NCBI GenBank assembly: GCA_002269645.1
Contig: NIVC01000717.1
Coordinates: forward strand, 186,001 to 250,000
Source: Macrostomum lignano
Taxonomy: Eukaryota
Direction of reading: 5' to 3'
Length of the DNA: 64,000 nt
The notes below the pieces were generated by a model that saw only the letters and a list, made by a program, of their open reading frames with translations, had not been told where the DNA came from and ran no database searches. This document shows, in pieces, positions 2,120 through 64,000 of the stretch (position 1 is its first letter; each line of letters opens with the position of its first letter). A program made the translations under genes and the position numbers.

Positions 2120-5100
2120 GGATTTTCCAACAGTTCTGGAACTGTAGGCATCCCAGATCTAATGGCATCTTCGGTTAAAATCGATTGAATAATATTCTCT
2201 GGAATTGGATAAAGAATTGAAAAGAAAACAAATTAAAATAATAAAAACAACAACCTTAAAACGCAACAACTCACTCAGATCAGTGGAGCAGGTCAGCGAG
2301 TGCGCGTCCACATAGGACGAAGTTAACACCTGACCAGTGGCCATTTCGTACAGGCAGTGGCCAAACGAATAAACGTCAATTTCTTCAAAAGATTTCAGAC
2401 GTTTCAACGACAGAACTCGTTGACGAAGCGAGCAGCTCAGGCCTAGCAGACCGTTCTCAAGGTCTGTCAGCTTGCAGCCGTTCTCAGATACAAGCACGTT
2501 TCCAAGGTGGAGATGTCCTGGGTAAAGCAGTTTGAGCATTGGATTTTACATGACTTGTTTAAGCATTGGACACGTGACTCCCTACTGACCCTGAAGACAC
2601 GTGACTCCCTACTGACCCTGAAGACACGTGACTCCCTACTGACCCTGAAGACACGTGACTCCCTACTGACTCTGAGGACACGTGACTCCCTACTGACCCT
2701 GAGGACACGTGACTCCCTACTGACTCTGAGGACATGTGACTCCCTGACCCTGAGGACACGTGACTCCCTACTGACTCTGAGGACACGTGACTCCCTACTG
2801 GCTCTGAGGACACGTGACTCCCTACTGACTCTGAGGACACGTGACTCCCTACTGACTCTGAGGACACGTGACTCCCTACTGACTCTGAGGACATGTGACT
2901 CCCTGACCCTGAGGACACGTGACTCCCTACTGACCCTGAAGACACGTGACTCCCTACTGACTCTGAGGACACGTGACTCCCTACTGACTCTGAGGACATG
3001 TGACTCCCTGACCCTGAAGACACGTGACTCCCTACTGACCCTGAAGACACGTGACTCCCTACTGACCCTGAAGACACGTGACTCCCTACTGACTCTGAGG
3101 ACACGTGACTCCCTACTGACCCTGAGGACACGTGACTCCCTACTGACCCTGAAGACACGTGACTCCCTACTGACTCTGAGGACACGTGACTCCCTACTGA
3201 CCCTGAGGACACGTGACTCCCTACTGACTCTGAGGACATGTGACTCCCTGACCCTGAGGACACGTGACTCCCTACTGACCCTGAAGACACGTGACTCCCT
3301 ACTGACCCTGAAGACACGTGACTCCCTACTGACCCTGAAGACACGTGACTCCCTACTGACCCTGAGGACACGTGACTCCCTACTGACCCTGAGGACACGT
3401 GACTCCCTACTGACCCTGAAGACACGTGACTCCCTACTGACCCTGAAGACACGTGACTCCCTACTGACCCTGAGGACACGTGACTCCCTACTGACTCTGA
3501 GGACACGTGACTCCCTGACTCTGAGGACACGTGACTCCCTAACTACTCAGAAGACACATGACCTTAAAAGTACACTACCTAAGAACACGTGACGTAGCCC
3601 ATAATCGATAACTCACCGTAGGCGAAGCCCTTCGAGTGCATAAACTTGAGTGCTTCAAGAATCTGCCGACCAAACGACTGGATCTGCGGCACACTGAGAC
3701 CGCCGCTAGGAGACGAAGCTCCTTTTTGTCGGCCGTACTTCTTTAGACAGTCCAACTTTGGCTTTGCCTATAAAAATTAAACCAGTATGTACATTAGAAC
3801 TTTAAAGTGTAAACGTGAAGTGTAACAGGTTAACAATCTTTTTAAGGCCCACCTTGTGCAGTAGGTCTCGAACTGAGCCGTGCCTTTCAAATTGTCTGAC
3901 GCAATAAAATCCGTGCTTAACGGCTCCGCAAATGTTGGCATTGGCAATGAATGGGTGCTAAAATTTCAGCATTAGAACAAGAAATAATAATAATGAACAA
4001 ACTACTTTACTGTAAGTAGAAAGTAAAGAAAAAATAGATAAAATTACGCTAATCGACGTTAGACAGGACACAACGGCAGCCGTGTCTTTCTGGTCCAAAT
4101 TGCAAAACGGTCCGTAGCCAACCTATATAAAAACGAAAAAAAATCTTTAAATGAAATTTAACTACTAAGAAAATATATTGAATAAACACTCACCCAAGTC
4201 ATCAGGTACTCATTCCTGTCCGTGGGCAGAGCACTCTCCGCAGTGAAATAAGTTTTACGAATTCTTGTTCCTGTAAATTGTAAATCATGACTCACTGAAA
4301 TTCAATGCCACTTTATAAGCTTCAAGTTTTAATAACTTACCCATAAACGAACAGGGTTGCAACACCTGAAAAGTGCTTTCGGATCTGAGAACCATCGACA
4401 CGTGTTGCAGTGACAGCTCTGTGAGGATGCAAGAGTGGAAAGAAATTATTGTTGATAAAGGAATAACAGCATGAGCATCTGGGAGGATGATGGTGACCTA
4501 GCAACTAAAGATCTGGGAGGCTGGCCCAGCAACTGAGGATCTGGGAGGCTGGCCCAGCAACTGAGAATCTGGGAGGCTGGCCCAGCAAATGAGGATCTGG
4601 GAGGCTGGCCCAGCAACTGAGGATCTGGGAGGCTGGCCCAGCAACTGAGGATCTGGAAGGCTGGCCCAGCAACTGAGGATCTGGGAGGCTGGCCCAGCAA
4701 CTGAGGATCTGGGAGGCTGGCCCAGCAACTGAGGATCTGGGAGGCTGGCCCAGCAACTGAGGATCTGGGAGGCTGGCCCAGCAACTGAGGATTTGGGAGG
4801 CTGGCCCAGCAACTGAGGATCTGGGAAGCTGGCCCAGCAACTGAGAATCTGGGAGGCTGGCCCAGCAACTGAAGATCTGGGAGGCTGGCCCAGCAACTGA
4901 GGATCTGGGAGGCTGGCCCAGCAACTGAGGATCTGGGATGCTGGCCCAGCAACTGAGAATCTGGGAGGCTGGCCCAGCAAATGAGGATCTGGGAGGCTGG
5001 CCCAGCAAATGAGAATCTGGGAAGGTGTCAGTCATATCAATTACCCTTTCTGAGACAAGCAACTCACCTTGATAGTTAAAGCAATAGTTATCAGGATCAA

Positions 5101-8100
5101 GGAACTGTTTCACTGGAAACGACTGCTCCAGGAGAGGAATGCTCAAGAGAACATTCACATAGTTTTGCAACTCTTTCTGCCTAGTAGCCACAAACTCCCT
5201 GCCCTTGTTGCCAACCCATTTCTTAGGTGGCAGTGGCAATTCATAGCCAGAAATTTTCAGTACATTGTCTAAACTGACAAAATCGTTGTAGCGTCGGTAA
5301 ACTTTCCACGAGTCTGAGTCACCTCTGTTTACCTTGAGGATGTACTCCTGTGAAAGTGAATACAATATGCAAATTAATTTATTTCATATTCATTTCATTT
5401 TATGAGGGTTTACTTTATAAAGAGTAAACATCTGGTAACATGAATAAAAAATTATGAAACAGCAATAATTTTAATTCTATTTGCAAATATATTTTCATAC
5501 AACCAAACCACAAACTTATCACATGTATTTACATACTTTTGGGCTAATCTGTGCTGTTATTAATGTTCAATAAGTTGTTTAACAATCACCATGCCAACGT
5601 CAATGAGCACAGAGCAATGAACTAATCTAAAATTTCTGGTCTGATTTAGAAAATTGCCCTCGAAAGCACTTGCACTGTTGCAACAAGTGTTGTTATGTAT
5701 GCTATGTATTGCTCCAGAGTTTTTCAGTGGCACAAGCAATTTGAGAAGGGGTGGGAAAGGGTTGAGGATGACACCAGGCGTGGAAGACCTTCAATGTCAA
5801 ATGTCAAAGGCATTGTCCACATAGAGTTTCTGTGCCAAGGCCAGACTATCAATCAGCATGTTTACAAGTACAAAGGCATCCTGCAGAAAAGACAAGAGAT
5901 GGATCTCGCAAATAGGAATGTCACAGTGCTAGACCTAGCTTCCATATTCACCCAATCTAGCTCCATGTGTTTTCCTATTTCCCAAAGCTCAAGGAGGTTC
6001 TCAAGGGTACTCAATTTCCTAATGTTGATAGGGGCCTACCATCAGAAGGGCCACAATGACAAAACTGCAAAGTATTTCCAAAGAAGCCTGGAGCAGAAGA
6101 ATGGACAAGTGCATTTGGCTCAGAGGGGGAGTACTTTGAAGGAGCCAGATTTGATTCTAATTGATTTTTGCTAATGAAGTTTCTGTGAGCCCAGTCCTAG
6201 GACTTTCTAACATATCTCATAAATCATTTTTTAAAAGTCTAATTCTACATACTATAAAACAACAAACAAGCAACAATTCTTTGTGCAATGCTTGACAATT
6301 AGATAAAAAAAGTTATGAGTTAAAATTTAAAAAATGTAAAATCAAACTAATTTGCACTTTTTGTTGATTTATTTTAAAGCCATAAAAATAGTGATTTTTA
6401 GAAAATAACTTTTCATATCTCTTATCACATGCCCTCTTTTTCTATGCTAGATATCTATCCCTTGCTACTCCCTACATATGCCTTGCACCTCCTTAATATA
6501 TAGGCCTCTATGTATTATGCTATTGCTAAACTAATCTATATTAAACACTATCTAAAAATTGCCATTGGCTGCAATATGGAATAAACCATTTAATTTTATC
6601 CAAAGTATAACCAAACCCCTTTCCTTTTTTATATCAATGCCACAATGCCATCTAACACATTTGGAACACTAAATAACCTAATATTTTTATTTTATAAAAC
6701 AATTGCTTAGTATATGATATATATTAGTTATAATAAGGAGTATTATTGTTAATTTAAACAAGAAAAAATTTAGTAGCAAAAAAGAAAATCAAACTAAAGT
6801 CAATAATAAGAAGTAGTCAATTAGTTAAAAAATTATATATAGGGCCTATAAAAATTAACTTTTAAGCAACAAAATAACCTGTTAAGTAATTAATACTAGT
6901 TAAAGTAAAACTTGTTAAATAAAATATATTGCAAAATGTCTTCTGTTTTTTATCTATAAAATGTCCTATAAAATTTTATCAAGAACAGGTGTTTAAAAGT
7001 TTAGGATATTTGGGTAAGCAGATAATGCATATTAGAAGGACCTACCTATACTGGCTATAGGTATTAAATATACAGGGTTGTTTAAATAAATCTAGAACAA
7101 TTTGTTTCACCTGCCAGAAATTTAAATTGAGTCGCACATCCTCGCCACTATAGCGAATTGTAGCCCTGCATCCCTGCCTTCTTTTGCATTCCAGCTTGTT
7201 ATTACTCCTGCTTCCTATTCATGGAAATTGATTGCCTAAAAATTATTATTGATTTGTTCCACATGGGACACACTCCTTTTCAAATTTCAAAGCTGCTTGG
7301 TTATCCCAAAAGCACCGTTTATGACATTGTTCATTGCTTTAAGTCAATTGGCAGTCCCGAAAGAAAGCTGCACACTGCTTGTCAGGATCAAATTCGGACA
7401 TCTAGCTTCCTAGTAAGACTGAAATGGTCAATTTAGGCAGCACCAGGCCAGCCATATCTGAGCTGGCCAAGAAGTAGACAGTCAGTCAACCAACAATCTC
7501 GCGAGCTGTCAATTGAGACCTCGGATGCCGCAGCTTCTTGCTGAAGATCCTGCAGCTGCTGATGTTGCAGCAGAAGATGGCCGAGTTGACAAATGCCACC
7601 AGCTCATTTCTTCTTTCAAGTCAATGGGTGGCCCCTTTCGCTTCTTCTTAGACAAGAAAATTTTTAAGATCAACTGCTTGCGCAACTCAGAATGATAAGT
7701 GGGTCTGCCAGGACATAGCTGAAGTGCCAGCTAACTGCTGGAGCAAGAAGCCAGTGTCTGTCATGGTCTTGGCCATCATCTCTAGCAACAGTCACGTAAT
7801 GCCGCCACACTTCTTTGGCCAAGGGGAGACCATGACCAAGGAGATATACCAGCGTATCCTAGAGGCAAAAGTAAAGCCATGGATAGACAAGGCAGCTGAT
7901 AAATGTCGAAACATCTTCTAGCAGGACTCTATGCTAGTCTACAAGTTAAGGCTTATCTAGCAGTGGTTGGCTGCCAATGTGCCACATTTTTGGCTGAGCT
8001 GTGTGTGGATGCCGAACAGCTTAGACTTAAACCTGTGCAACTTCTACTTGTGGGGCAGAGTCTAGCGGGCAGCTTGTGCCACTTTCCATGGCAACGTAGA

Positions 8101-9338: not shown

Positions 9339-45937
<36,599 letters not shown>

Positions 45938-47066
45938 CTTTATAATTTAGAAGCACGATCAGTGTTACACTACACATTGTGTATCAATATTGTAGGATAT
46001 TGTTATTCGTGCTTAATTAAGTCTGTCTTGCCCCGGATATAATAACAACATTTTTATAACAGTGTTATCTGTTGTATGGTTTCAATATTTTTATAAAAAA
46101 TATTTAATACGACCAATTTTAGGCATGCACGGGCGTCACTAGTAATGTTAGCTAATAACAGAATAACAACGAAGCATATAGCAGCATATATTTTTTGTTT
46201 TAGTTAATTGGTAATCCTTGTAGTTAAACTGTTTGGTGTCACCCAATCAATAGTTTTATTTTGTTGATTTTTTTCTATTTCAACGTATGGTCCTTCATCC
46301 GCTTCTTTCTCGTGTTAATCGTTAAATTTTTGTTAATGCGTTGTGGTAAAATCGTTCCGGATTTTTAGAAATCTGTGAACGTTTAATCTCAGTAATATCA
46401 GTTCACACTTTTTTCCAGATTCATCCAATAAATACGTTAATATTAATTTCTAAAAATTAATTCGTCCTAAATTGTAACTATTTCGCGCTTATTAGCATTG
46501 AAATATTTCACTCATAATTACATCGTGAATTTTGCATTAATAACCGTTTTGATTGCAATTTACAAATTCTAGTTCTTGTTGTAGTTGCTGAAGATTGTTG
46601 TACACCATCTTCGCTATATTTTACTAGAAAAGCATAGTATATCTCCTAACTCCCTAAGCAGTTTGTGTACTTTCATTCCGCCATTTTTTATGCATAATTT
46701 ATTTAAAGTTGTAATTCTAGCAAGCTTGTACATTGTTGTTTAATTGTTATATAGATAACAGTTGATATTTTGTTCTGGAAAATATTTTTGTTCGTTGCAC
46801 ACGCTTACAAAGATTCCGTAATTTTCCTCTGATCTAAGTGATTATTTATTGTTTTTATTGCATTAGCAAGAAAGCGAGCTATTCTTGTAGTCAAACTTTC
46901 TTCGAAATTATTTTATTTCCATTATTAGAAGGTCGAAATTAATTTATACAATATACTAAAAAATCAAATTTCTCAATGCACTTTTGTGATGCAAAATTGG
47001 CTATAAATTCAATGTCACGCCCATAAAAATGTCGCCTGACAGTCAGGCTGGGTTACTGATTCAGTC

Positions 47067-47420
47067 TTTTTTATTTTTTATCAGACAGGGGTTGTGTGCA
47101 CCCTGGCGCACTTTAAGCGACATAGGCACACAACCGGCGAGAACTGCCCATTCCGCCGACTCCCCTGAGCAGGCATACAAGCGCGCGGATACGTACGCAG
47201 GCACACACTCACACAGGAGTGTACAGCGGCCCTAACTTTATTTATCGTTAGACATTTACACTTCACAGTTCCTTCGGGGTTGGACCCCAAGGACGTTACG
47301 AGCAGATCGAGCCAAGCCGAGATTCCAATTAGCCCCAAATTAATGTGAATGCACTTGGAATCGAGCTTGGGCCGCTGGCACATCAGAGCGCCGCGCCTAG
47401 ACCATTGGGCTACGGCCCCC
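47067..47420 (-). mobile_element. tRNA-derived SINE, family A, second copy
   Basis: Colinear and highly similar to 30507-30871. Confidence 0.88.
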
Positions 47421-47734
47421 TTATCGGCACTTTATTGCTTTTAATATTCTAGTCTTATGTTCAGTGGCTGGCAGACTAAAATACTGCCAACCTCTCTCCG
47501 TCTTTTTTATTACTGAGTTCAATTCAGCTTTCTGTCCTTGCCTCGATTCTCATTGGCTGACGCCAGTCACACCACCCTATAGCGCCGCCAACCTCACTAC
47601 GCTGTCGTTCTATCCCTCCAGTTTAATTGCTCGGCCCCTCACAGCAGTTCACAGCTTCAACCCTCTGTTCCTCTCCGCATTCTCATTGGCTATCGTTAGT
47701 CTGAAATCGATCTTCATTGATAATAGCTAGTGGC

Positions 47735-47835
47735 GCCGATTCAGACTGAGTGGTGCCAATTCGGATTGAGTGGCGCTGATTCGGCGCCGATTCGGATTGA
47801 GCGGCGCCGATTCGGATTGAGTAACACCGATTGAG
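47735..47835. repeat. Short about 20-bp repeat (GCCGATTCGGATTGAGTGG)
   Basis: 4-5 degenerate units. Confidence 0.75.
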
Positions 47836-48267
47836 TGTTAAAAACGGTTGCGCACAGAGAGATTTTGAAAAACAGCGTACTTTTAAAGTTAGATACATGT
47901 TCGATCTATAATTAGATTTCTTAAATAAGCGGTTTACTCGCAGTCAGGAATGTTGAAACTGATGCGCGCACAGGTGTACTATATAACTTTGTCGATGTCA
48001 CTTTCCAATTTAGGTAGAATAGCTAAAGGAATAAACACCCGACCAATCTGTTTAAAAATTAAATTTAACTATTCGAAGGCATCACCATACATCAGTTTAG
48101 TTACAGCTTGTCAACGCTAAATTTATCTAAAATAAATTTATCTATGCTGTCATCTTCTAAATTTATTAGCTCATTCCGACTACATAAAAACTCGCTCTGA
48201 AAAAAATTCTCATTAATAAAGCAACCTAATTTGAAAGGTTTTGTTTTAAATAAAACAAATCAGCTAT

Positions 48268-48590
48268 ATGGATTTCGTTAAGGTTGGAAAATCTGGCAAG
48301 TCACTGAGCCTGACAAGAAAAAGCAATATTGACGGTTACAAGGATATTTGCATCATCAAGGACATCGAGGTGTGTAACGTTGCACTATTGATTTCGTGTA
48401 TTATTAAATTTGTGTCTCTGCTCAATATGCAAGTCACTGGAATATTCTGCAGAGACGAGGCGCCGCAGTCAAGCAACTGGCAGACAATGCATCCAGAATG
48501 CGAACGACTTCTGCGCAATTCAACGATCTTGCGGAGAAACTTGCTCAAAAGCACAAAGCGAAAGATAGAAAACTTTGCACCCTACTGTAA
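48268..48590 (+). CDS. Tomosyn-like R-SNARE mini-protein (or alternative tomosyn terminal exons) ending in CaaX
   Basis: Exon 48268-48369 (MDFVKVGKSGKSLSLTRKSNIDGYKDICIIKDIE), GT-AG intron 48370-48452, exon 48453-48590 (RRGAAVKQLADNASRMRTTSAQFNDLAEKLAQKHKAKDRKLCTLL*); 79 aa. Aligns without gaps to the tomosyn tail encoded at 45794-45937. Exon 2 homology is solid; exon 1 is less sure. Confidence 0.72.
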
Positions 48591-49104
48591 ATTCTGACAA
48601 ATTAATTTTGCGAACAAACTCACAAACTCAAATTGGCGTTTAATATTCCAGTGATGCCGCTAGTTTTGATTTTGTTTTAATCTGTTCCACTATATGCATT
48701 TATTCTTAAATATCTAACAAGCTGTCTTGAAAAAGCCTTGTCACATAACATGTACATCTAAGTCGATTCTGCTGTACATTATATGTTTGATATTTATTCA
48801 GATCTCTAGTAAGATTTTGACCTTTTCTGTCATTTTACGTTTGAACAATCAAACTTTTCTGTTATTAACTGGCTTTATAAACGCTATAGGTTTTCATATT
48901 AGAAAGTTTTTCACAAACGCTACTTTCTACTTGTACCAGTAGTGCAGCTTGCGTATTACGAGAAAGAGTAAAGCTTTTGTAAGAATGTATAGTAGCTATT
49001 TAGTTACACTATTAAATCAATAATTACTGGCAGATTTACTTTAGATTGGCTCAATATATATAAAGCTTCAATTAAATGACTTATGTTCTTGATGAAACTA
49101 TTAT

Positions 49105-49582
<478 letters not shown>

Positions 49583-49701
49583 CATTAAATTTGTCTAAAC
49601 TTCAGTCTGATTAAGGCTGCATTTAGTATAAGCATCTGGGACTTGGTTGAACAATTTATTTGAGCAAATGGAGACGAGTTCTTAATCCCATGCAACACTC
49701 C

Positions 49702-49998
49702 TCACTTCTCAGCGCGCACTCGCAGAGTCCTGACTCGATCTTGGATCACCTTGCGCAGTCGCTCTTCCTCTTTGACGTTGATCAGCACCAGCACGTCGTT
49801 GTCGGTGACGCCGCAAGCGTACAGCGATGCGACGTCCTGCAGAACCTCCGCCTTGAAGATCAGCTTCATTTCGGTGACTGTCTCCGGGAACGATCGGATG
49901 GCGAGGTGGACTCGCTGTTTGAGTTGCAGCACAGAGAACCAAGGCGGGCAGTCAATCAGATAGGCTCGCCTGCCGTGCAGAATTCTAATGCGGATCAT
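49702..49998 (-). CDS. Small ubiquitin-like domain protein (98 aa), no C-terminal diglycine
   Basis: GC-rich ORF in AT-rich context; ubiquitin-fold pattern MIRIRI..SVLQLKQRV..MKLIFKAEVLQD..SL..CGVTDNDVLVL, then a charged helix. A GTGAG donor near the stop means a further exon is possible. Confidence 0.8.
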   Translation of the reverse strand: MIRIRILHGRRAYLIDCPPWFSVLQLKQRVHLAIRSFPETVTEMKLIFKAEVLQDVASLYACGVTDNDVLVLINVKEEERLRKVIQDRVRTLRVRAEK

Positions 49999-50194
49999 TG
50001 AGTCTTTAAGTTGATTATTTATAATGATTTTAATCAAAACAAAACATCTATGTTAAACTTTGTCCGATTCTATATCGTTTCTACATCTTTAATCTATAAC
50101 TGCATGAGCAGCTGAAGCCATAGACTACGTGCTAACAATTTGGTGTTTCGGCCAAGGTTCAAAAAGGGTCTGCTACTGCACTAGCGTGAGTAGT

Positions 50195-52021: not shown

Positions 52022-53281
52022 TCAGACAGTGCTCACGGTGAGCTTAGTGTGCGAAGGTTGATTGTGGTAGTCCTTCTGCTTGATAAGCTGCTGCTGCTGC
52101 TTCTGCTGCTGCTCTGCTTTTCCTCGACTGGTCCTGGTGGCCAGAGCAACAGCCGTCTGCTGCTGACTGCGGTGTCTGTACAGGGCCGATTTAATCGACT
52201 TGCCTTTGGCCTCGCGAAGTCGTTGAACCCGATCCTCAGCGGCCAGGCAGCAGCTGCAGCCGGGGCAGAGTCGATGACAGCGCAAGGCCACCAGCAGCTG
52301 GGACACAACCAGCAGAGATCGCCGCCTGAACGAGCGCACGAACACCAGGTACACCCAGAAGTTCAGCACGTAGTTGAAATCCTTCACAGACGAAGTGAAT
52401 CGAGAGTTGTGCGACAGGAAAGCGGCGTACTTGGCGTGCTGCTTCTGGTAGGCCTCGGGCCGGCTCTCGAACACCTGGCGAACGCAGATGCTGACAGCCA
52501 GAGGGAGGACCAGAATGCAATAGGCGATCGCCAGGGTCAGGTGGGCATAGAACCTGCTCATCTCCATCTGATTGTCGGCAGCTGTTGGCAAGATACTTGC
52601 TCGATTGCGTCGAATCACTGTCAGCTTGGCCACGATCACAACGCCCAGGAGGCAGACAATGACAGACGGCACAACGAACGAACCGAACGTCATGAAGTAG
52701 AGCATGACGCGAGACAGGCTCCGGTTGACGCCGCTCTGTGCTTGAAGCTCGCACTTGCGCTCAAGCTGGAGACCAATTTTGCTAGTGTTCTGCAGTTGAA
52801 TATCGTGAATGAGAGCCATCGGGAGCATCAGAGTCAGGCCGCACAGGTAAGTTAACCCGACAATCAGCAGAGTAGGTTTGATGTAAAAATGTGACATAAA
52901 CTGTAACGGCCGGAATATGGTCAGCGTGCGGTCCAGACTGAAGATGATGAGCAGGTAAGACGAAGTGAAGTAGGCCACGCTGGGAATGTACTCCATCAGT
53001 TTACAGGTGACGCTGGATATAGTGTCAATCTTGATAAGAATTGCTCCGCCAGACGCGTACCAGAGTCCCCGGCCAAGAAAGTCGTCCAGAAACGTGTTAA
53101 AAATCAGCGCAAACGTGTCGGAGACGGCTATAGCGATGCCATACACGGCGAACCGGGTCCAGCGACGGCTTCCAGCATTTTCCAGCAGGAATATGGCCAT
53201 TGTTGTCACGTTGCCAAGCAGTCCGAAAAGTACAACGCCAGGCATGACGTAACCGCGAAGTATGCCAACTGCATCGTCCAT
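52022..53281 (-). CDS. Class A (rhodopsin-like) orphan/peptide-type GPCR, coding region intronless
   Basis: Seven hydrophobic segments; GLLGN (TM1), AVSD (TM2), C at the top of TM3, SLDR (DRY variant), LP in TM4/TM6, NFWVY (NPxxY variant), helix 8 SFRR, polyQ tail. A short upstream exon is possible. Confidence 0.9.
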   Translation of the reverse strand: MDDAVGILRGYVMPGVVLFGLLGNVTTMAIFLLENAGSRRWTRFAVYGIAIAVSDTFALIFNTFLDDFLGRGLWYASGGAILIKIDTISSVTCKLMEYIPSVAYFTSSYLLIIFSLDRTLTIFRPLQFMSHFYIKPTLLIVGLTYLCGLTLMLPMALIHDIQLQNTSKIGLQLERKCELQAQSGVNRSLSRVMLYFMTFGSFVVPSVIVCLLGVVIVAKLTVIRRNRASILPTAADNQMEMSRFYAHLTLAIAYCILVLPLAVSICVRQVFESRPEAYQKQHAKYAAFLSHNSRFTSSVKDFNYVLNFWVYLVFVRSFRRRSLLVVSQLLVALRCHRLCPGCSCCLAAEDRVQRLREAKGKSIKSALYRHRSQQQTAVALATRTSRGKAEQQQKQQQQLIKQKDYHNQPSHTKLTVSTV

Positions 53282-54088
53282 AATGATGTAGTGATCTCTA
53301 TCAAACAAACGTTCCCTGTTTGCGCAAGAAGATTTTTAGGTCAGACAGTCAGCCGCATCCGCGATATTTAGGTTTCATTCTCGGATAAGCAAAGAAATTC
53401 GGGTGGGCAGAAGCCCGTCAACCAATAGGAGAGAAACTGCTCATTCATTGCTCAGTTTGGCCCTGCCGGAGAAGAATTCGAAATTACTGATGTGCCGTCC
53501 TGTTTCCAGCCTGTGCGCCAGCAAGTGACAAACTGGATTTCCCGCTCCCCCCGACTCGGGATGCCTTCTCCAGCTCTGTCAGCGCAGCGTCAGTCAGTGC
53601 AACTTGCATCCTTCTGCGCTTAGTTTATGGGAACCGCAATTTGTCAAACTCATTCCCCATCTAGGCTGGCTCTCGGCAGCTCCCCTCAACCCTTAGTTGG
53701 TCCTCAAGCCGAAAATGCTTTCTTTGCTCATACCAGAGATTGGGATTTCCTCCCATGCTAGGGCGCGTCGCTTTACAAGTTACCACGAGGCTCTCAAGCT
53801 GTGGCTGAAGACTCCCGCTTGAGTCTCTGCGGCATCCAGCGGCCGCCCGCCCAAGGAAAGGCAGAGTGGCTCAAAGAGCTTCACTGTGGCATTCTGCTGA
53901 TGGCCTTCTTATCCGGGCTTCCTCATCTGCGAAAGAGGCATCAGGGAGCAGAAGTAATACCCTTAATCTCAGCTTGTCTAGGAAGCCAAAACCAAAATCC
54001 CTTTTTATAACCCCATTCTGGGCAAAAATCCCCGTGTGTCTTTCGTAGTTTCGTAGCATGTTTATCAACAAAAAAATCCCCTTATGCC

Positions 54089-61791: not shown

Positions 61792-63689
61792 CTAGTCTTC
61801 CTCTTTGATCTCCTTCAACATCTGCATGTGCAGTTGGCCCAGACTGCCCGTTCTACCGCTGGTGGCCTGAGCCGCTGCAGCCACTGCCGCCTGAGACTGG
61901 AACACCCCTGGATTGCGCTTCATCTCCAAGCGGTCGACCATCTCTGCGGCAGCTCGACTAGCTGACCAGTTCGGGCAGAGCGCCACAAGGCGGAGTCGGA
62001 CAAAGGCGAACGCCAGGGCGAGCTGAACTCGACGCCTGAAGCTGCGAACGAACATCAGATAGACCCAGAAGTTGATGGCGTAGCTGATGTCCTGAAATCG
62101 ATTAGTCGATTGATTCGTTTCTAGAGACGTTTTTTTCTGGTTCAAAATAACGATAGAAGTACCCCTAGCATGCTGCATGATAGCTGCGTACATTACAACT
62201 TGCATACTTCCTTGCTGGGGTACGCTTCCTGAATTCTGGCCCGGCAGAGCAGCTGAGTGATAAACGAGTCTGACGCTCTTGCGCCACGACCCAGCTGGTT
62301 CGATTCCACATTTATTTGGGGCTTGAGCATTAAAAATGGCCTGGGGTTGTCGTTGCGATTGACATCCATGTCGGCCAACTCCCCATGAGCACAGAGTGCA
62401 TATGCCTGACGATTAAAAAAGTCGGGACAGCTCATGCTCCCTGTGTGAGTGTGTGTATGAGTTCGTGTCTGTGTATGGTACTGCACCCACCGCTTGTACA
62501 CAGGAGTGCTCATGTGCTCTGGAGTAAGCGAAATGACCTGAATTGCCTGAGCACTAGTTAAATGACAATGTCGCTGTAATGTAGATCTATCTACCTGGTC
62601 TATTATTTCTGTCATAGCTCAAAGGAGTGATGCAAGCAGTGCTCGAAGCCCACTGGACTAGTGACAAAAATAGAACTAGTACTCAAAAATCACGTCTTTT
62701 TGGCTTTTCTAGCATGACAACATCGAGCGTATACGCACCTTGACGGAGTCCAGCAGCTTGGCAGCCTGTTCAAGGACGTGACACCGGCAGCTCGGTCGAG
62801 GCTCGCAGAGGCCGCAGCCCGTCCTCATCACGATCACTACGCAGAGCGGACTCGACAGCAGACAGAAGGTGATGGACACCGCCAGGTTGGCATAGTAACG
62901 CGACATCGCCAAGTCTTTATCGTGTGAGCCGGGCAGCAGGTCGCGTCTCAAGCGTCTCACCTGAATAAGCTTGGCAACAATGGCTGCACTGAGTGCCGCT
63001 TGCAGTAGGCATGGAGCAACAAATATTCCGAATGCTTTAAAGTACAGGATGTACTTTGCTGCTGAGCTTGACTGTCCTCCATCGGTGCAGTTCAAAGCGA
63101 TTCGACAGCTAAACGACATGACATCCTCGTAGCCGGCGGTCTCCAGTCCATAGACCGCGATCACCGGGGACATGAGAATCAGGCCGAGGACTGCCACAGA
63201 GACTGCCGCAGCCACAGACTGAGTCACGTACCGGTGAGTCATCATTCGCATCGGCTGACTCACTGTCAGCAGTCGGTCAGCTGAGAATATCACTAGCAGG
63301 TAGGACGAGGCGAACAATGTCGAGTGTTGCATGTACTCGAGCAGTCGGCAACTCATCGGATGAGAGGCATCGAGCTTCAGCACCTCACTACCGTAAATGT
63401 GAGCCAAGCCTCTGCCAAGGAAGTCGTCGATGAAGCTGCTGAAGATAAGCACGCTGGAGTCCGATATCGCCAGAGCTACACACCAGATACCAAATCGGTT
63501 CCATCGCGACAGCCGAGCCTCCAGTGAGAAGATTGCAATTGTGAGAGCGTTCCCGAGAAGGCCCAGAATCACAATGGCAGGCGAACCAATTGCCCTGGTG
63601 GCACCGACTCCGTATCTTAGACGGTTCTCGAACTTGTCCGAACAGTTGTCCGGCCAGTGGTGCGAGAGCTCTCGGACGCCGTCAGGCAT
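61792..63689 (-). CDS. Class A GPCR, paralog of 52022-53281, two coding exons
   Basis: Exon 63689-62739 (GLLGN, AISD, FIDDFLGRGL, SSYLLVIFSADR..SVK), phase-0 GT-AG intron 62738-62092, exon 62091-61792 (DISYAINFWVYLMFVRSFRRR..*). The start may be extended by an upstream exon (acceptor at about 63738). Confidence 0.9.
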
Positions 63690-64000
63690 GCTGCGAGGTT
63701 GCAAGCCTTTGGAGAGTGAAAGTTGGAGACAGTATTTCTGTAAAATACGTGCAATGGATTGTAACAAAACTTTTTTCACAGGAATACTTACAAAGATCCT
63801 GTTATCCCTTCTGTTTCAGTTAGGTTGTTCTCGTTAAACAGTATTTAAGTTGACGCAAACAAGAACGTTTTTTACTGCTGACCTAGAATTCGCCCCTTTG
63901 CCCGTTCTGACAAACTGTTTGCTTTCCTGTTGCATCGCATGGGGATGTGCCAGGGGTTTTTACCTATTATCTGGTTTGCTGGTGCCTGTACACCGAAGCA

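What the first reader, a model, noticed from the sequence alone, without database searches (positions are those of the whole stretch)
48264..48590. Unannotated tomosyn-derived R-SNARE ending in a CaaX prenylation box
Seen: 2.3 kb after the tomosyn stop is a diverged copy of its tail, RRGAAVKQLADNASRMRTTSAQFNDLAEKLAQKHKAKDRKLCTLL* versus [44 protein letters not shown]. The zero-layer R and layers +1 to +8 (V, L, A, M, S, F, A, L) fit the synaptobrevin pattern, so it appears to be under protein-level selection. The aromatic end is replaced by polybasic plus CTLL. Known: tomosyn and amisyn are anchorless decoy R-SNAREs, CaaL directs geranylgeranylation, and Ykt6 is the classic lipid-anchored R-SNARE. 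Inference: either a stand-alone 79-aa prenylated mini-SNARE (ATG 48268, with an AG 4 nt upstream that could be a cis or trans-splice acceptor), or alternative terminal exons giving membrane-anchored tomosyn (in-frame joins 45394 to 48453, or 44930 to 48264). I know of no described equivalent; it could be a new membrane-tethered regulator of vesicle fusion.
Basis: partly seen in the sequence, partly recalled or inferred. Interest (0 to 1): 0.9.

Follow-up and report, generated by a model that had tools for sequence, protein, structure and literature searches.

The report
Lipid-anchorable half R-SNARE beside flatworm tomosyn
Just downstream of a tomosyn gene in the flatworm Macrostomum lignano lies a diverged copy of tomosyn's last exon. 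It forms a predicted 79-residue protein carrying half of a vesicle-fusion (R-SNARE) helix and a lipid-anchor signal; the idea is plausible and new, but expression, conservation and function are all untested.

Summary
The sequence observation holds. Window 48453-48590 encodes RRGAAV...KDRKLCTLL*, a significant but diverged copy of the last exon of the adjacent tomosyn paralog (35% amino-acid and 53% nucleotide identity; BLASTP E 6e-11). It has Arg at layer 0, compatible residues at layers +1 to +8, and a CaaL box at the end.

The window is Macrostomum lignano NIVC01000717.1:186001-250000. The feature is not unannotated: the exact 79-aa two-exon product is UniProt A0A1I8IDN3, an uncharacterised entry with an automatic name.

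Only the C-terminal half of an R-SNARE motif is present (layers -2 to +8; Pfam 21 bits, below the 26.4 cut-off). Exon 1 has no detectable homolog. None of the three possible transcript models restores the N-terminal half.

Neutral-decay simulations disfavour a dead relic (P about 0.02-0.04 given an open frame; chance CaaX end 6e-4). No ortholog, paralog or transcript could be retrieved.

- **Best reading (about 0.4):** a lineage-specific small gene whose product is geranylgeranylated, polybasic and membrane-tethered, and acts as a tomosyn-like decoy or inhibitor.
- **Rival (0.35):** a non-functional relic plus a gene-prediction artefact.
- **Rival (0.15):** alternative terminal exons of tomosyn.

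Moderately interesting; everything functional is inferred.

The parts
48264..48369 (+). Exon 1 of the mini-gene. An AG acceptor-like site ends at 48263, the ATG is at 48268, and the exon encodes MDFVKVGKSGKSLSLTRKSNIDGYKDICIIKDIE. It has no detectable homology to tomosyn. It supplies only Ile at SNARE layers -1 and -2.
   Evidence: The tomosyn-tail HMM gives -0.4 bits for exon 1. The exact exon is used in UniProt A0A1I8IDN3.
48370..48452 (+). 83-nt GT-AG intron, phase 0 (GAG|gtgtgt ... ttctgcag|AGA).
   Evidence: The acceptor fits the [T/C]TNCAG/CAG motif reported for M. lignano (PMC8629364).
48453..48590 (+). Exon 2, a diverged copy of the tomosyn last exon. It encodes RRGAAVKQLADNASRMRTTSAQFNDLAEKLAQKHKAKDRKLCTLL plus the stop codon and carries R-SNARE layers 0 to +8.
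   Evidence: Pfam Synaptobrevin 19.6-21.1 bits, below the 26.4 cut-off.
48456..48458 (+). Codon CGA for Arg36, the predicted zero-layer arginine. It is the same codon as in the tomosyn exon.
48549..48572 (+). Polybasic juxta-anchor stretch KHKAKDRK, inherited from tomosyn KYKDKDKK.
48576..48587 (+). CaaL box Cys76-Thr-Leu-Leu (TGC ACC CTA CTG), followed by TAA. In tomosyn the aligned codons are TGG CAG TTT TAA (W Q F stop), so the box arose by W>C and a one-codon shift of the stop.
   Evidence: A chance CaaX-type end arose in 6e-4 of neutral simulations.
45794..45937 (+). Parent-like sequence: the last exon of the adjacent tomosyn paralog (QGLERGEKL...KKFWQF*).
   Evidence: (P0007).
44835..45394 (+). 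Three preceding tomosyn exons (44835-44930, 45045-45184, 45267-45394). The last has a GC donor (CAG|gcaagt). 44930 and 45394 are the donors of the two possible alternative joins.

Best explanation
This is a lineage-specific, two-exon small gene in Macrostomum lignano. It arose when the last exon of a tomosyn gene was copied about 2.5 kb downstream and acquired a new 5' exon with a start codon.

The 79-residue product has three parts:
- a short basic N-terminal segment;
- one helix carrying R-SNARE layers -2 to +8 with the zero-layer arginine;
- tomosyn's polybasic tail, now ending in CTLL.

Inferred mechanism:
1. GGTase-I geranylgeranylates Cys76.
2. Together with the polybasic stretch, the lipid places the helix on the cytoplasmic face of a membrane, most likely the plasma membrane.
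3. There the helix occupies the membrane-proximal (C-terminal) half of syntaxin/SNAP-25 acceptor complexes, as tomosyn's SNARE motif does.
4. Because it has a lipid anchor and lacks the N-terminal half of the motif, it cannot drive fusion. It therefore works as a membrane-tethered decoy or brake, or possibly as a placeholder that a full v-SNARE displaces.

Shown: the homology, the layer pattern, the CaaL motif, the intact splice signals and the identical independent gene model. Inferred: transcription, prenylation, localisation, binding and the inhibitory effect.
For: - Exon 2 is homologous to tomosyn tails: E 6e-11; 28 bits; one search shows it is the only hit in 45938-49700.
- All nine layer positions are R-SNARE-compatible.
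- The same ATG, donor, acceptor and stop give UniProt A0A1I8IDN3 from an independent annotation of another assembly.
- The intron is a clean GT-AG with an acceptor of the species' consensus type.
- pS 0.67 against pN 0.42.
- When neutral decay is simulated to the observed 53% nucleotide identity, an open frame survives in 8% of runs. Among those, the layer pattern survives in 4% and the BLOSUM score is reached in 2%. A CaaX-type end arises in 0.06%.
- Precedents: SNARE-only tomosyn products are biologically active in C. elegans (TOM-1B, PMC10112904). Engineered geranylgeranylated SNAREs are membrane-bound, enter SNARE complexes and dominantly block fusion (PMC2192637).
Against: - No ortholog or paralog was found in 1.84 billion representatives or 5.8 billion clusters. 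Those libraries hold almost no Macrostomum data.
- No transcript evidence could be reached.
- Only half a SNARE motif is present, below Pfam's cut-off.
- Exon 1 has no homolog, and its AlphaFold model is low-confidence.
- There is no AATAAA within 400 nt of the stop, only ATTAAA at 49011 and 49071.
- The ATG context is weak, and a spliced leader added at 48264 would put an out-of-frame upstream ATG in front of it.
- The gene caller used for the NCBI record in the collection did not call it.
- The simulations assume that the neighbouring tomosyn exon is the parent. The UniProt proteome does not even contain this window's tomosyn, so a closer, unseen parent cannot be excluded.
Confidence: 0.4

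Rival explanations
1. It is a non-functional relic. A partial tandem duplication copied the tomosyn last exon. It is now decaying or recently dead, and the 79-aa UniProt entry is a prediction artefact. A gene predictor supported only by protein similarity to R-SNAREs would have added a fortuitous upstream ORF as exon 1.
For: - Single copy, with no homolog anywhere.
- Exon 1 is unrelated to anything; its only hits are repeat-inflated matches to bacterial Ig-like repeat proteins.
- Half motif below the Pfam cut-off.
- AT-rich surroundings (35% GC).
- No canonical poly(A) signal nearby.
Against: - Given an open frame, the joint retention of Arg at layer 0 and all eight hydrophobic or small layers occurs in 4% of neutral runs, and the observed BLOSUM score in 2%.
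- A CaaL end next to a polybasic stretch arises in 6e-4 of runs.
- Six of 14 conserved non-Met residues use different codons, the signature of amino-acid conservation through saturating synonymous change.
- The flanking splice signals are intact.
Confidence: 0.35
2. The two exons are alternative 3'-terminal exons of the upstream tomosyn gene. The donor at 44930 would join 48264, or the weak GC donor at 45394 would join 48453. The result is a full-size tomosyn (WD40/Lgl scaffold) whose anchorless tail is replaced by a prenylatable one, that is, a membrane-anchored tomosyn isoform.
For: - Both joins are in frame.
- The AG at 48262-48263 is preceded by a T-rich tract.
- Tomosyn's last intron has a GC donor. 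From general knowledge, such donors are often associated with alternative splicing.
- A spliced leader at 48264 would be out of frame, whereas the tomosyn exon is in frame.
Against: - In-frame compatibility is a 1-in-3 event for each join.
- The exons lie 1.8 kb beyond tomosyn's own AATAAA at 46427.
- The 45394>48453 join removes three residues (QGL) and breaks the heptad register, so the Pfam match stays at profile positions 26-71 and 20.5 bits.
- The 44930>48264 join drops the conserved linker [21 protein letters not shown] and the whole N-terminal half of the motif.
- The independent annotation made it a separate gene.
- No tomosyn model ending in CTLL exists in the databases.
Confidence: 0.15
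3. The stop at 48588 is bypassed by splicing from a GTAAAT donor at 48587 to the ttccag acceptor before 48652. This adds LDAASFDFVLICSTICIYS, a short hydrophobic tail, so the protein would be tail-anchored rather than prenylated.
For: Donor-like act|GTAAAT in phase 2 and a consensus acceptor 65 nt downstream. This was the best of all downstream acceptors tested, with mean Kyte-Doolittle hydropathy 1.61 over 18 residues.
Against: - The tail is only about 13 hydrophobic residues long and is interrupted by Asp, Ser and Thr, which is too short for a SNARE transmembrane domain.
- AT-rich non-coding DNA readily gives such strings.
- It is the best of many acceptors tried.
- The independent model stops at CTLL.
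Confidence: 0.03

Closest known systems
Tomosyn (STXBP5/TOM-1) C-terminal R-SNARE motif; regulatory R-SNARE group
   Same: Exon 2 is a homolog of the tomosyn last exon. Shared features are the R-G after the zero layer, RMR, and the LAQK.K.KD.K tail. It lies directly downstream of a tomosyn paralog that has Lgl_C and Synaptobrevin domains. The expected mode of action is the same: occupying Q-SNARE acceptor complexes in place of a v-SNARE.
   Different: - No WD40/Lgl scaffold.
- Layers -7 to -3 are absent.
- The universal anchorless ending KYKDK(DK)K[WF]W/YQ[FLM], seen in the 16 tails retrieved, is replaced by a CaaL box.
C. elegans TOM-1B / TOM-1S, the short SNARE-only tomosyn isoform (PMC10112904)
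   Same: A small tomosyn-derived protein consisting essentially of the R-SNARE region, with demonstrated activity of its own.
   Different: TOM-1B is made from an alternative 5' exon inside tom-1 and shares the canonical complete SNARE exons, with no lipid anchor. Here a duplicated, diverged exon outside the gene gives half a motif plus CaaL.
Ykt6, the natural lipid-anchored R-SNARE
   Same: An R-SNARE without a transmembrane domain that has a C-terminal CaaX box (PMC6143360, PMC8000380, PMC12001115).
   Different: Ykt6 has an N-terminal longin domain, a complete SNARE motif and a double-Cys CCAIM-type signal (farnesyl plus a second lipid), and it is a fusogenic SNARE conserved in all eukaryotes. 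None of these applies here.
Engineered geranylgeranylated Snc1/Sso2 (Grote et al. 2000, PMC2192637)
   Same: A SNARE helix held on the membrane by a CaaL-directed geranylgeranyl group. These proteins are membrane-bound, enter SNARE complexes and dominantly inhibit fusion. This is the best functional analogy.
   Different: Those are artificial constructs with full SNARE motifs. This would be a natural protein with a half motif.
CaaX-bearing complexins (vertebrate Cplx3/4 and invertebrate complexins)
   Same: Small helical SNARE-complex regulators whose CaaX lipidation concentrates them at membranes (PMC11536687).
   Different: They are an unrelated family that binds the groove of an assembled SNARE complex and does not replace a SNARE helix.
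Amisyn (STXBP6)
   Same: A small protein with a tomosyn-like regulatory R-SNARE motif that acts as a brake on exocytosis (general knowledge; grouped with tomosyn in PMC6143360).
   Different: Amisyn has an N-terminal PH-like domain and a complete motif, has no CaaX box and is vertebrate-specific. No sequence relationship beyond the SNARE motif was detected.

Membership tests
R-SNARE (Pfam PF00957 Synaptobrevin / V-SNARE coiled-coil homology) | Arginine at the central zero layer | tested here: met
   Arg36 aligns with the zero-layer Arg of tomosyn tails and falls in the Pfam match.
R-SNARE (Pfam PF00957 Synaptobrevin / V-SNARE coiled-coil homology) | Hydrophobic or small residues at layers +1 to +8 in 3-4 spacing | tested here: met
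   V, L, A, M, S, F, A, L at +4, +7, +11, +14, +18, +21, +25 and +28 from Arg36.
R-SNARE (Pfam PF00957 Synaptobrevin / V-SNARE coiled-coil homology) | N-terminal half of the motif (layers -7 to -1) | tested here: not met
   Only Ile at -1 and -2; Asp, Asp and Ser at -3, -4 and -5. The Pfam match covers profile positions 23-71 only. No other SNARE-like exon exists in 45938-49700, and chimeras with tomosyn exons do not extend the match.
R-SNARE (Pfam PF00957 Synaptobrevin / V-SNARE coiled-coil homology) | Score at or above Pfam's gathering threshold (26.4 bits) | tested here: not met
   21.1 bits for the 79-aa protein and 19.6 bits for exon 2; the tomosyn tail scores 35.3 bits.
R-SNARE (Pfam PF00957 Synaptobrevin / V-SNARE coiled-coil homology) | Forms a four-helix bundle with Qa, Qb and Qc SNAREs | not testable with these tools
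   Needs binding assays or a complex structure. The single-chain AlphaFold model has pLDDT 69 and is uninformative.
Tomosyn family (Lgl-like scaffold plus regulatory R-SNARE) | Tomosyn-type SNARE tail sequence | tested here: met
   28-29 bits against an HMM of 10 tomosyn tails; BLASTP E 6e-11.
Tomosyn family (Lgl-like scaffold plus regulatory R-SNARE) | N-terminal WD40/Lgl propellers in the same polypeptide | tested here: inconclusive
   Absent from the 79-aa model. Present only if the exons are spliced to the upstream gene; both joins are in frame, but no transcript data exist.
Tomosyn family (Lgl-like scaffold plus regulatory R-SNARE) | Anchorless aromatic C-terminus (KYKDKKWYQF type) | tested here: not met
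   It ends in KDRKLCTLL, whereas all tails retrieved from other animals end in K[WF][WY][QP][FLM].
CaaX proteins, GGTase-I substrates | Cys four residues from the C-terminus, aliphatic a2, and Leu as the last residue | tested here: met
   C76-T-L-L followed by the stop. The rule that X = Leu directs geranylgeranylation is established knowledge.
CaaX proteins, GGTase-I substrates | Actual prenylation, and conservation of the Cys in orthologs | not testable with these tools
   No ortholog was retrieved. Biochemistry is required.
Ykt6 | N-terminal longin domain and CCxxx double-Cys lipidation signal | tested here: not met
   Pfam finds no longin domain in the 79 aa, and there is a single Cys in the C-terminal box.
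TOM-1B-type short tomosyn isoform | Alternative 5' exon inside the tomosyn gene spliced to the canonical SNARE exons | tested here: not met
   Both exons lie 2.3 kb or more beyond the tomosyn stop, and the SNARE exon is a separate copy with 53% nucleotide identity.

The most novel reading that the evidence does not exclude
Macrostomum lignano makes a natural geranylgeranyl-anchored, polybasic, tomosyn-derived half R-SNARE, either as a 79-aa protein or as a tomosyn isoform tail. It sits on the target membrane and regulates exocytosis by occupying the membrane-proximal half of Q-SNARE acceptor complexes. This would be a natural counterpart of the engineered geranylgeranylated SNAREs and of the synthetic C-terminal v-SNARE peptides used in fusion assays. 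It would have been born from a single exon duplication in which W>C and a one-codon stop shift created the lipid anchor.
Probability: 0.25. Interest if true: 0.65.

Novelty: new variant of a known kind. Interest (0 to 1): 0.45.

Why it matters
If real, it would be the first natural example of a regulatory (tomosyn-type) R-SNARE helix tethered to a membrane by a prenyl group. It would also be a compact case of gene birth: one duplicated exon, one new 5' exon, and two small changes that turn an aromatic tail into a CaaL box.

It would offer a natural test of two long-discussed ideas:
- lipid-anchored SNAREs arrest fusion after docking or hemifusion;
- occupancy of the C-terminal half of the acceptor complex controls v-SNARE entry.

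The significance is limited because the gene appears to be lineage-specific, carries only half a motif and has no expression data.

Tried and rejected
1. **Orthologs and paralogs.** I ran a word-indexed search of 5.8 billion clusters with the 79-aa protein, a full HMMER scan of 1.84 billion representatives, and a profile search with tomosyn tails plus the copy. The only hits were the protein itself, canonical tomosyn tails and two bacterial Ig-repeat proteins. The bacterial hits match exon 1 through summed repeats, and I regard them as spurious.
2. **Exact look-ups.** The 79-aa product, the unspliced 109-aa ORF, the 30-aa ORF and neighbouring ORFs are not on record. Only the tomosyn last-exon ORF led to the source contig.
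3. **Is exon 1 a copy of tomosyn's penultimate exon?** A 'VG.SG' and 'IDGYK' resemblance suggested it, but the HMM score was -0.4 bits, so I rejected it.
4. **A hidden exon for the N-terminal SNARE half.** Six-frame HMM and tblastn scans of 45938-49700 found none.
5. **A downstream transmembrane exon behind a donor at the stop codon.** Only a weak candidate turned up.
6. **Transposon capture.** There are no convincing terminal inverted or direct repeats around the exons and no tRNA-like element.
7. **PDB sequence search.** No significant hit; VAMP8 and VAMP2 appear only at E about 1.
8. **AlphaFold without an alignment.** pLDDT 69, with strands in exon 1 and two helices in exon 2; too weak to use.
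9. **Layer versus non-layer conservation by Fisher test.** Not significant on its own (p 0.07-0.13).
10. **Literature.** There is no paper on prenylated or CaaX tomosyn, on Macrostomum tomosyn, or citing A0A1I8IDN3. The paper describing the first M. lignano annotation is not held, so the evidence behind the UniProt model could not be checked.
Full report
**What is in the sequence**

Window 48453-48590 (+) reads RRGAAVKQLADNASRMRTTSAQFNDLAEKLAQKHKAKDRKLCTLL followed by TAA. Window 48268-48369 reads MDFVKVGKSGKSLSLTRKSNIDGYKDICIIKDIE.

The two blocks are separated by an 83-nt phase-0 intron with GAG|gtgtgt and ttctgcag|AGA. An AG lies four bases before the ATG.

The tomosyn tail [47 protein letters not shown] ends at 45937. 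All coordinates, the 79-residue length and the two proposed in-frame joins (44930>48264 and 45394>48453) were reproduced.

**Origin and annotation status**

- The tomosyn last-exon ORF is on record from NCBI assembly GCA_002269645.1, contig NIVC01000717.1 (390,821 bp).
- The fetched locus is identical to the window, which places the window at record positions 186,001-250,000. The organism is therefore the free-living flatworm Macrostomum lignano.
- The exact 79-aa protein already exists as UniProt A0A1I8IDN3, 'V-SNARE coiled-coil homology domain-containing protein', a cluster of one.
- 'Unannotated' is therefore wrong for the stand-alone model. The entry carries only an automatic name, and no paper mentions it.
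- From memory, A0A1I8 entries derive from the MAKER annotation of the earlier ML2 assembly. I could not read the paper, so I do not know whether RNA or only protein similarity supported the model.

**The neighbour is a tomosyn**

The last four exons are 44835-44930, 45045-45184, 45267-45394 and 45794-45937. Together with an upstream exon at 43190-43396, they give Lgl_C (22 bits, cut-off 20) plus Synaptobrevin (31 bits, cut-off 26.4). They are 47-79% identical, piece by piece, to M. lignano tomosyn fragments in UniProt.

The species therefore has at least two diverged tomosyn paralogs. The one in this window is itself missing from UniProt. Its last intron uses a GC donor (CAG|gcaagt).

**Homology of the copy**

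- Exon 2 aligns without gaps to the tomosyn last exon: 15/43 identical, 27/43 positive, E 6e-11.
- It is the only such match in the window and in all six frames of 45938-49700.
- It scores 28-29 bits against an HMM I built from ten tomosyn tails, and 19.6 bits against Pfam Synaptobrevin. It is therefore tomosyn-type rather than brevin-type.
- Arg36 uses the same CGA codon as the parent. Layers +1 to +8 are V, L, A, M, S, F, A, L, against L, L, T, M, A, Y, A, L in tomosyn.
- The polybasic stretch is inherited, not new (KYKDKDKK becomes KHKAKDRK).
- The ending changed from TTT TGG CAG TTT TAA to CTT TGC ACC CTA CTG TAA. A W>C change and a one-codon shift of the stop created CTLL.

**What is missing**

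Exon 1 has no similarity to tomosyn's penultimate exon (-0.4 bits) or to anything else credible. The two hits in the 1.84-billion-protein scan are bacterial proteins with many Ig-like repeats.

Counting back from Arg36, only layers -1 and -2 are hydrophobic (Ile, Ile). Layers -3 to -5 are Asp, Asp and Ser. The Pfam match covers profile positions 23-71 and stays below the cut-off (21.1 against 26.4 bits).

Splicing exon 2 to tomosyn's 45394 donor removes three residues (QGL) relative to the canonical protein, and the Pfam match does not extend (20.5 bits, profile 26-71). The 44930 join gives 20.0 bits. Whatever the transcript, the product carries a half R-SNARE motif.

**Transcript models**

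- **Stand-alone gene.** This model has a good internal intron. Its acceptor fits the species' reported motif (PMC8629364).
- **5' end.** The acceptor-like AATCAG before 48264 fits the reported trans-splice motif [T/C]TNCAG poorly. The M. lignano spliced leader ends in ATG, so attached at 48264 it would open a 6-codon out-of-frame upstream ORF (MLYGFR) that overlaps the start codon.
- **Poly(A) signals.** Tomosyn's own AATAAA is at 46427. After the mini-gene there are only ATTAAA signals at 49011 and 49071, followed by a (TTAG)120 microsatellite.
- **Alternative-terminal-exon models.** Both are in frame, which is a 1-in-3 event for each, and they cannot be excluded.
- **Bypass of the stop codon.** A bypass through a GTAAAT donor to a short hydrophobic exon is possible on paper but unconvincing.
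- **Transposon capture.** No transposon signature flanks the exons.

**Is it under selection?**

Nucleotide identity to the parent-like exon is 53%, with pS 0.67 and pN 0.42 (NG86 dN/dS about 0.37, with dS near saturation). Six of the 14 conserved non-Met residues use different codons.

I simulated neutral decay of the tomosyn exon with AT-biased mutation. The first version put all divergence on the copy's lineage. The more conservative version let the tomosyn lineage accumulate only synonymous changes.

At the divergence that reproduces 53% identity, the conservative version gave:

| Outcome in neutral runs | Frequency |
|---|---|
| Frame stays open | 8% |
| Arg at layer 0 plus eight compatible layers, given an open frame | 4% |
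| Observed BLOSUM62 score reached, given an open frame | 2% |
| CaaX-type C-terminus arises | 0.06% |

These results argue against a copy that has drifted freely since duplication. There are four caveats:
- The parent is assumed.
- An unseen closer paralog is possible.
- Recent loss of function cannot be detected.

A simple Fisher test of layer against non-layer conservation is not significant (p 0.07-0.13).

**Comparative evidence**

None could be obtained. The protein libraries contain tomosyn last-exon ORFs from many animals, and all end in KYKDKKWYQ[F/L/M] or close variants. None has a CaaX box. They contain nothing like the copy. The DNA collections available here do not include flatworm genomes or transcriptomes.

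**Mechanism (inferred)**

- C-T-L-L satisfies the CaaX rule with X = Leu, which directs GGTase-I (established knowledge).
- A geranylgeranyl group next to a polybasic stretch is the classical plasma-membrane signal of Rho and Rap GTPases (established knowledge).
- A tomosyn-type helix covering layers 0 to +8 would be expected to pair with the membrane-proximal half of syntaxin/SNAP-25.
- Engineered geranylgeranylated Snc1 and Sso2 are membrane-bound, enter SNARE complexes and dominantly block fusion after docking (PMC2192637).
- The SNARE-only TOM-1B isoform of C. elegans is active by itself (PMC10112904).
- CaaX lipidation is already used by another class of small SNARE regulators, the complexins (PMC11536687).

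The most economical prediction is a membrane-tethered decoy or brake. A placeholder role, analogous to C-terminal v-SNARE peptides that pre-structure acceptor complexes in vitro (my own knowledge), is an alternative.

**Comparison and verdict**

It works like a tomosyn or amisyn-type decoy with a Ykt6-like solution to anchoring, but it is a member of none of these:
- It fails the full-motif and threshold tests for R-SNAREs.
- It lacks the Lgl scaffold and the aromatic tail of tomosyn.
- It lacks the longin domain of Ykt6.
- It lacks the gene structure of TOM-1B.

I rate it a new variant of a known kind.

| Reading | Probability |
|---|---|
| Stand-alone gene | 0.40 |
| Relic or prediction artefact | 0.35 |
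| Tomosyn isoform | 0.15 |
| Transmembrane-exon variant | 0.03 |

Interest is moderate (0.45). The idea is neat and cheaply testable with existing M. lignano RNA-seq. However, it is lineage-restricted, carries only half a motif, and has no expression or conservation evidence so far.

Noticed in passing
window 45395-45793: The last intron of the tomosyn paralog has a GC donor (CTGCAG|gcaagt) rather than GT. It also contains a 53-nt tandem repeat of 4.5 copies (45434-45673) that reads as a long proline-rich ORF.
   Followed up: partly
window ~14700-45937 (+): The tomosyn gene spans more than 30 kb because its introns are filled with long tandem arrays. Examples are about 3.8 kb of a strongly C/T-rich short repeat at 23837-27619 (GC skew -0.9), 'SVCLSVCL' arrays at 31.9-33.8 kb, and a 42-nt repeat of 10.6 copies at 44123-44567. 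Many of these read as long spurious ORFs.
   Followed up: no
(P0004, P0005, P0006): M. lignano has a second, diverged tomosyn paralog whose tail ends in ...[12 protein letters not shown]. The last exon is 73% identical (36/49) and the other exons 47-79% identical to the window's gene. The window's own tomosyn is absent from UniProt. Whether the other paralog also has a downstream mini-exon could not be checked.
   Followed up: partly
window 48268-48369 (exon 1): Residues 2-36 give nominally significant hits (E 9e-6 and 2e-4) to two large bacterial proteins with many Ig-like repeats ('SGKT..YSLTVKAKHDGYQYxCVVTDG'). AlphaFold also draws this segment as three beta strands. The E-values come from summing repeats, so I treat the match as chance. 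The segment remains unexplained.
   Followed up: partly
window 49104-49582: A (TTAG)n microsatellite of about 120 copies lies between the mini-gene and the convergent downstream gene.
   Followed up: no
window 49702-50037 (-): A convergent ORF with a weak ubiquitin-family match (22.1 bits, just under the 25.4 cut-off). It was also called as a gene in the NCBI-derived record (116 aa). A minus-strand AATAAA lies directly after its stop.
   Followed up: no
window 52022-53308 (-) and 62709-63779 (-): Two single-exon ORFs look like paralogous GPCRs. The first matches rhodopsin-family 7tm_1 at 64.7 bits. The second was not scanned and is judged only by shared motifs (GRGL, FS.DR). They suggest a small GPCR cluster.
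   Followed up: partly
window 4505-5365 (-): An ORF with a PX domain (59 bits) runs into a tandem-repeat array. It probably belongs to a sorting-nexin-like gene upstream of tomosyn.
   Followed up: no
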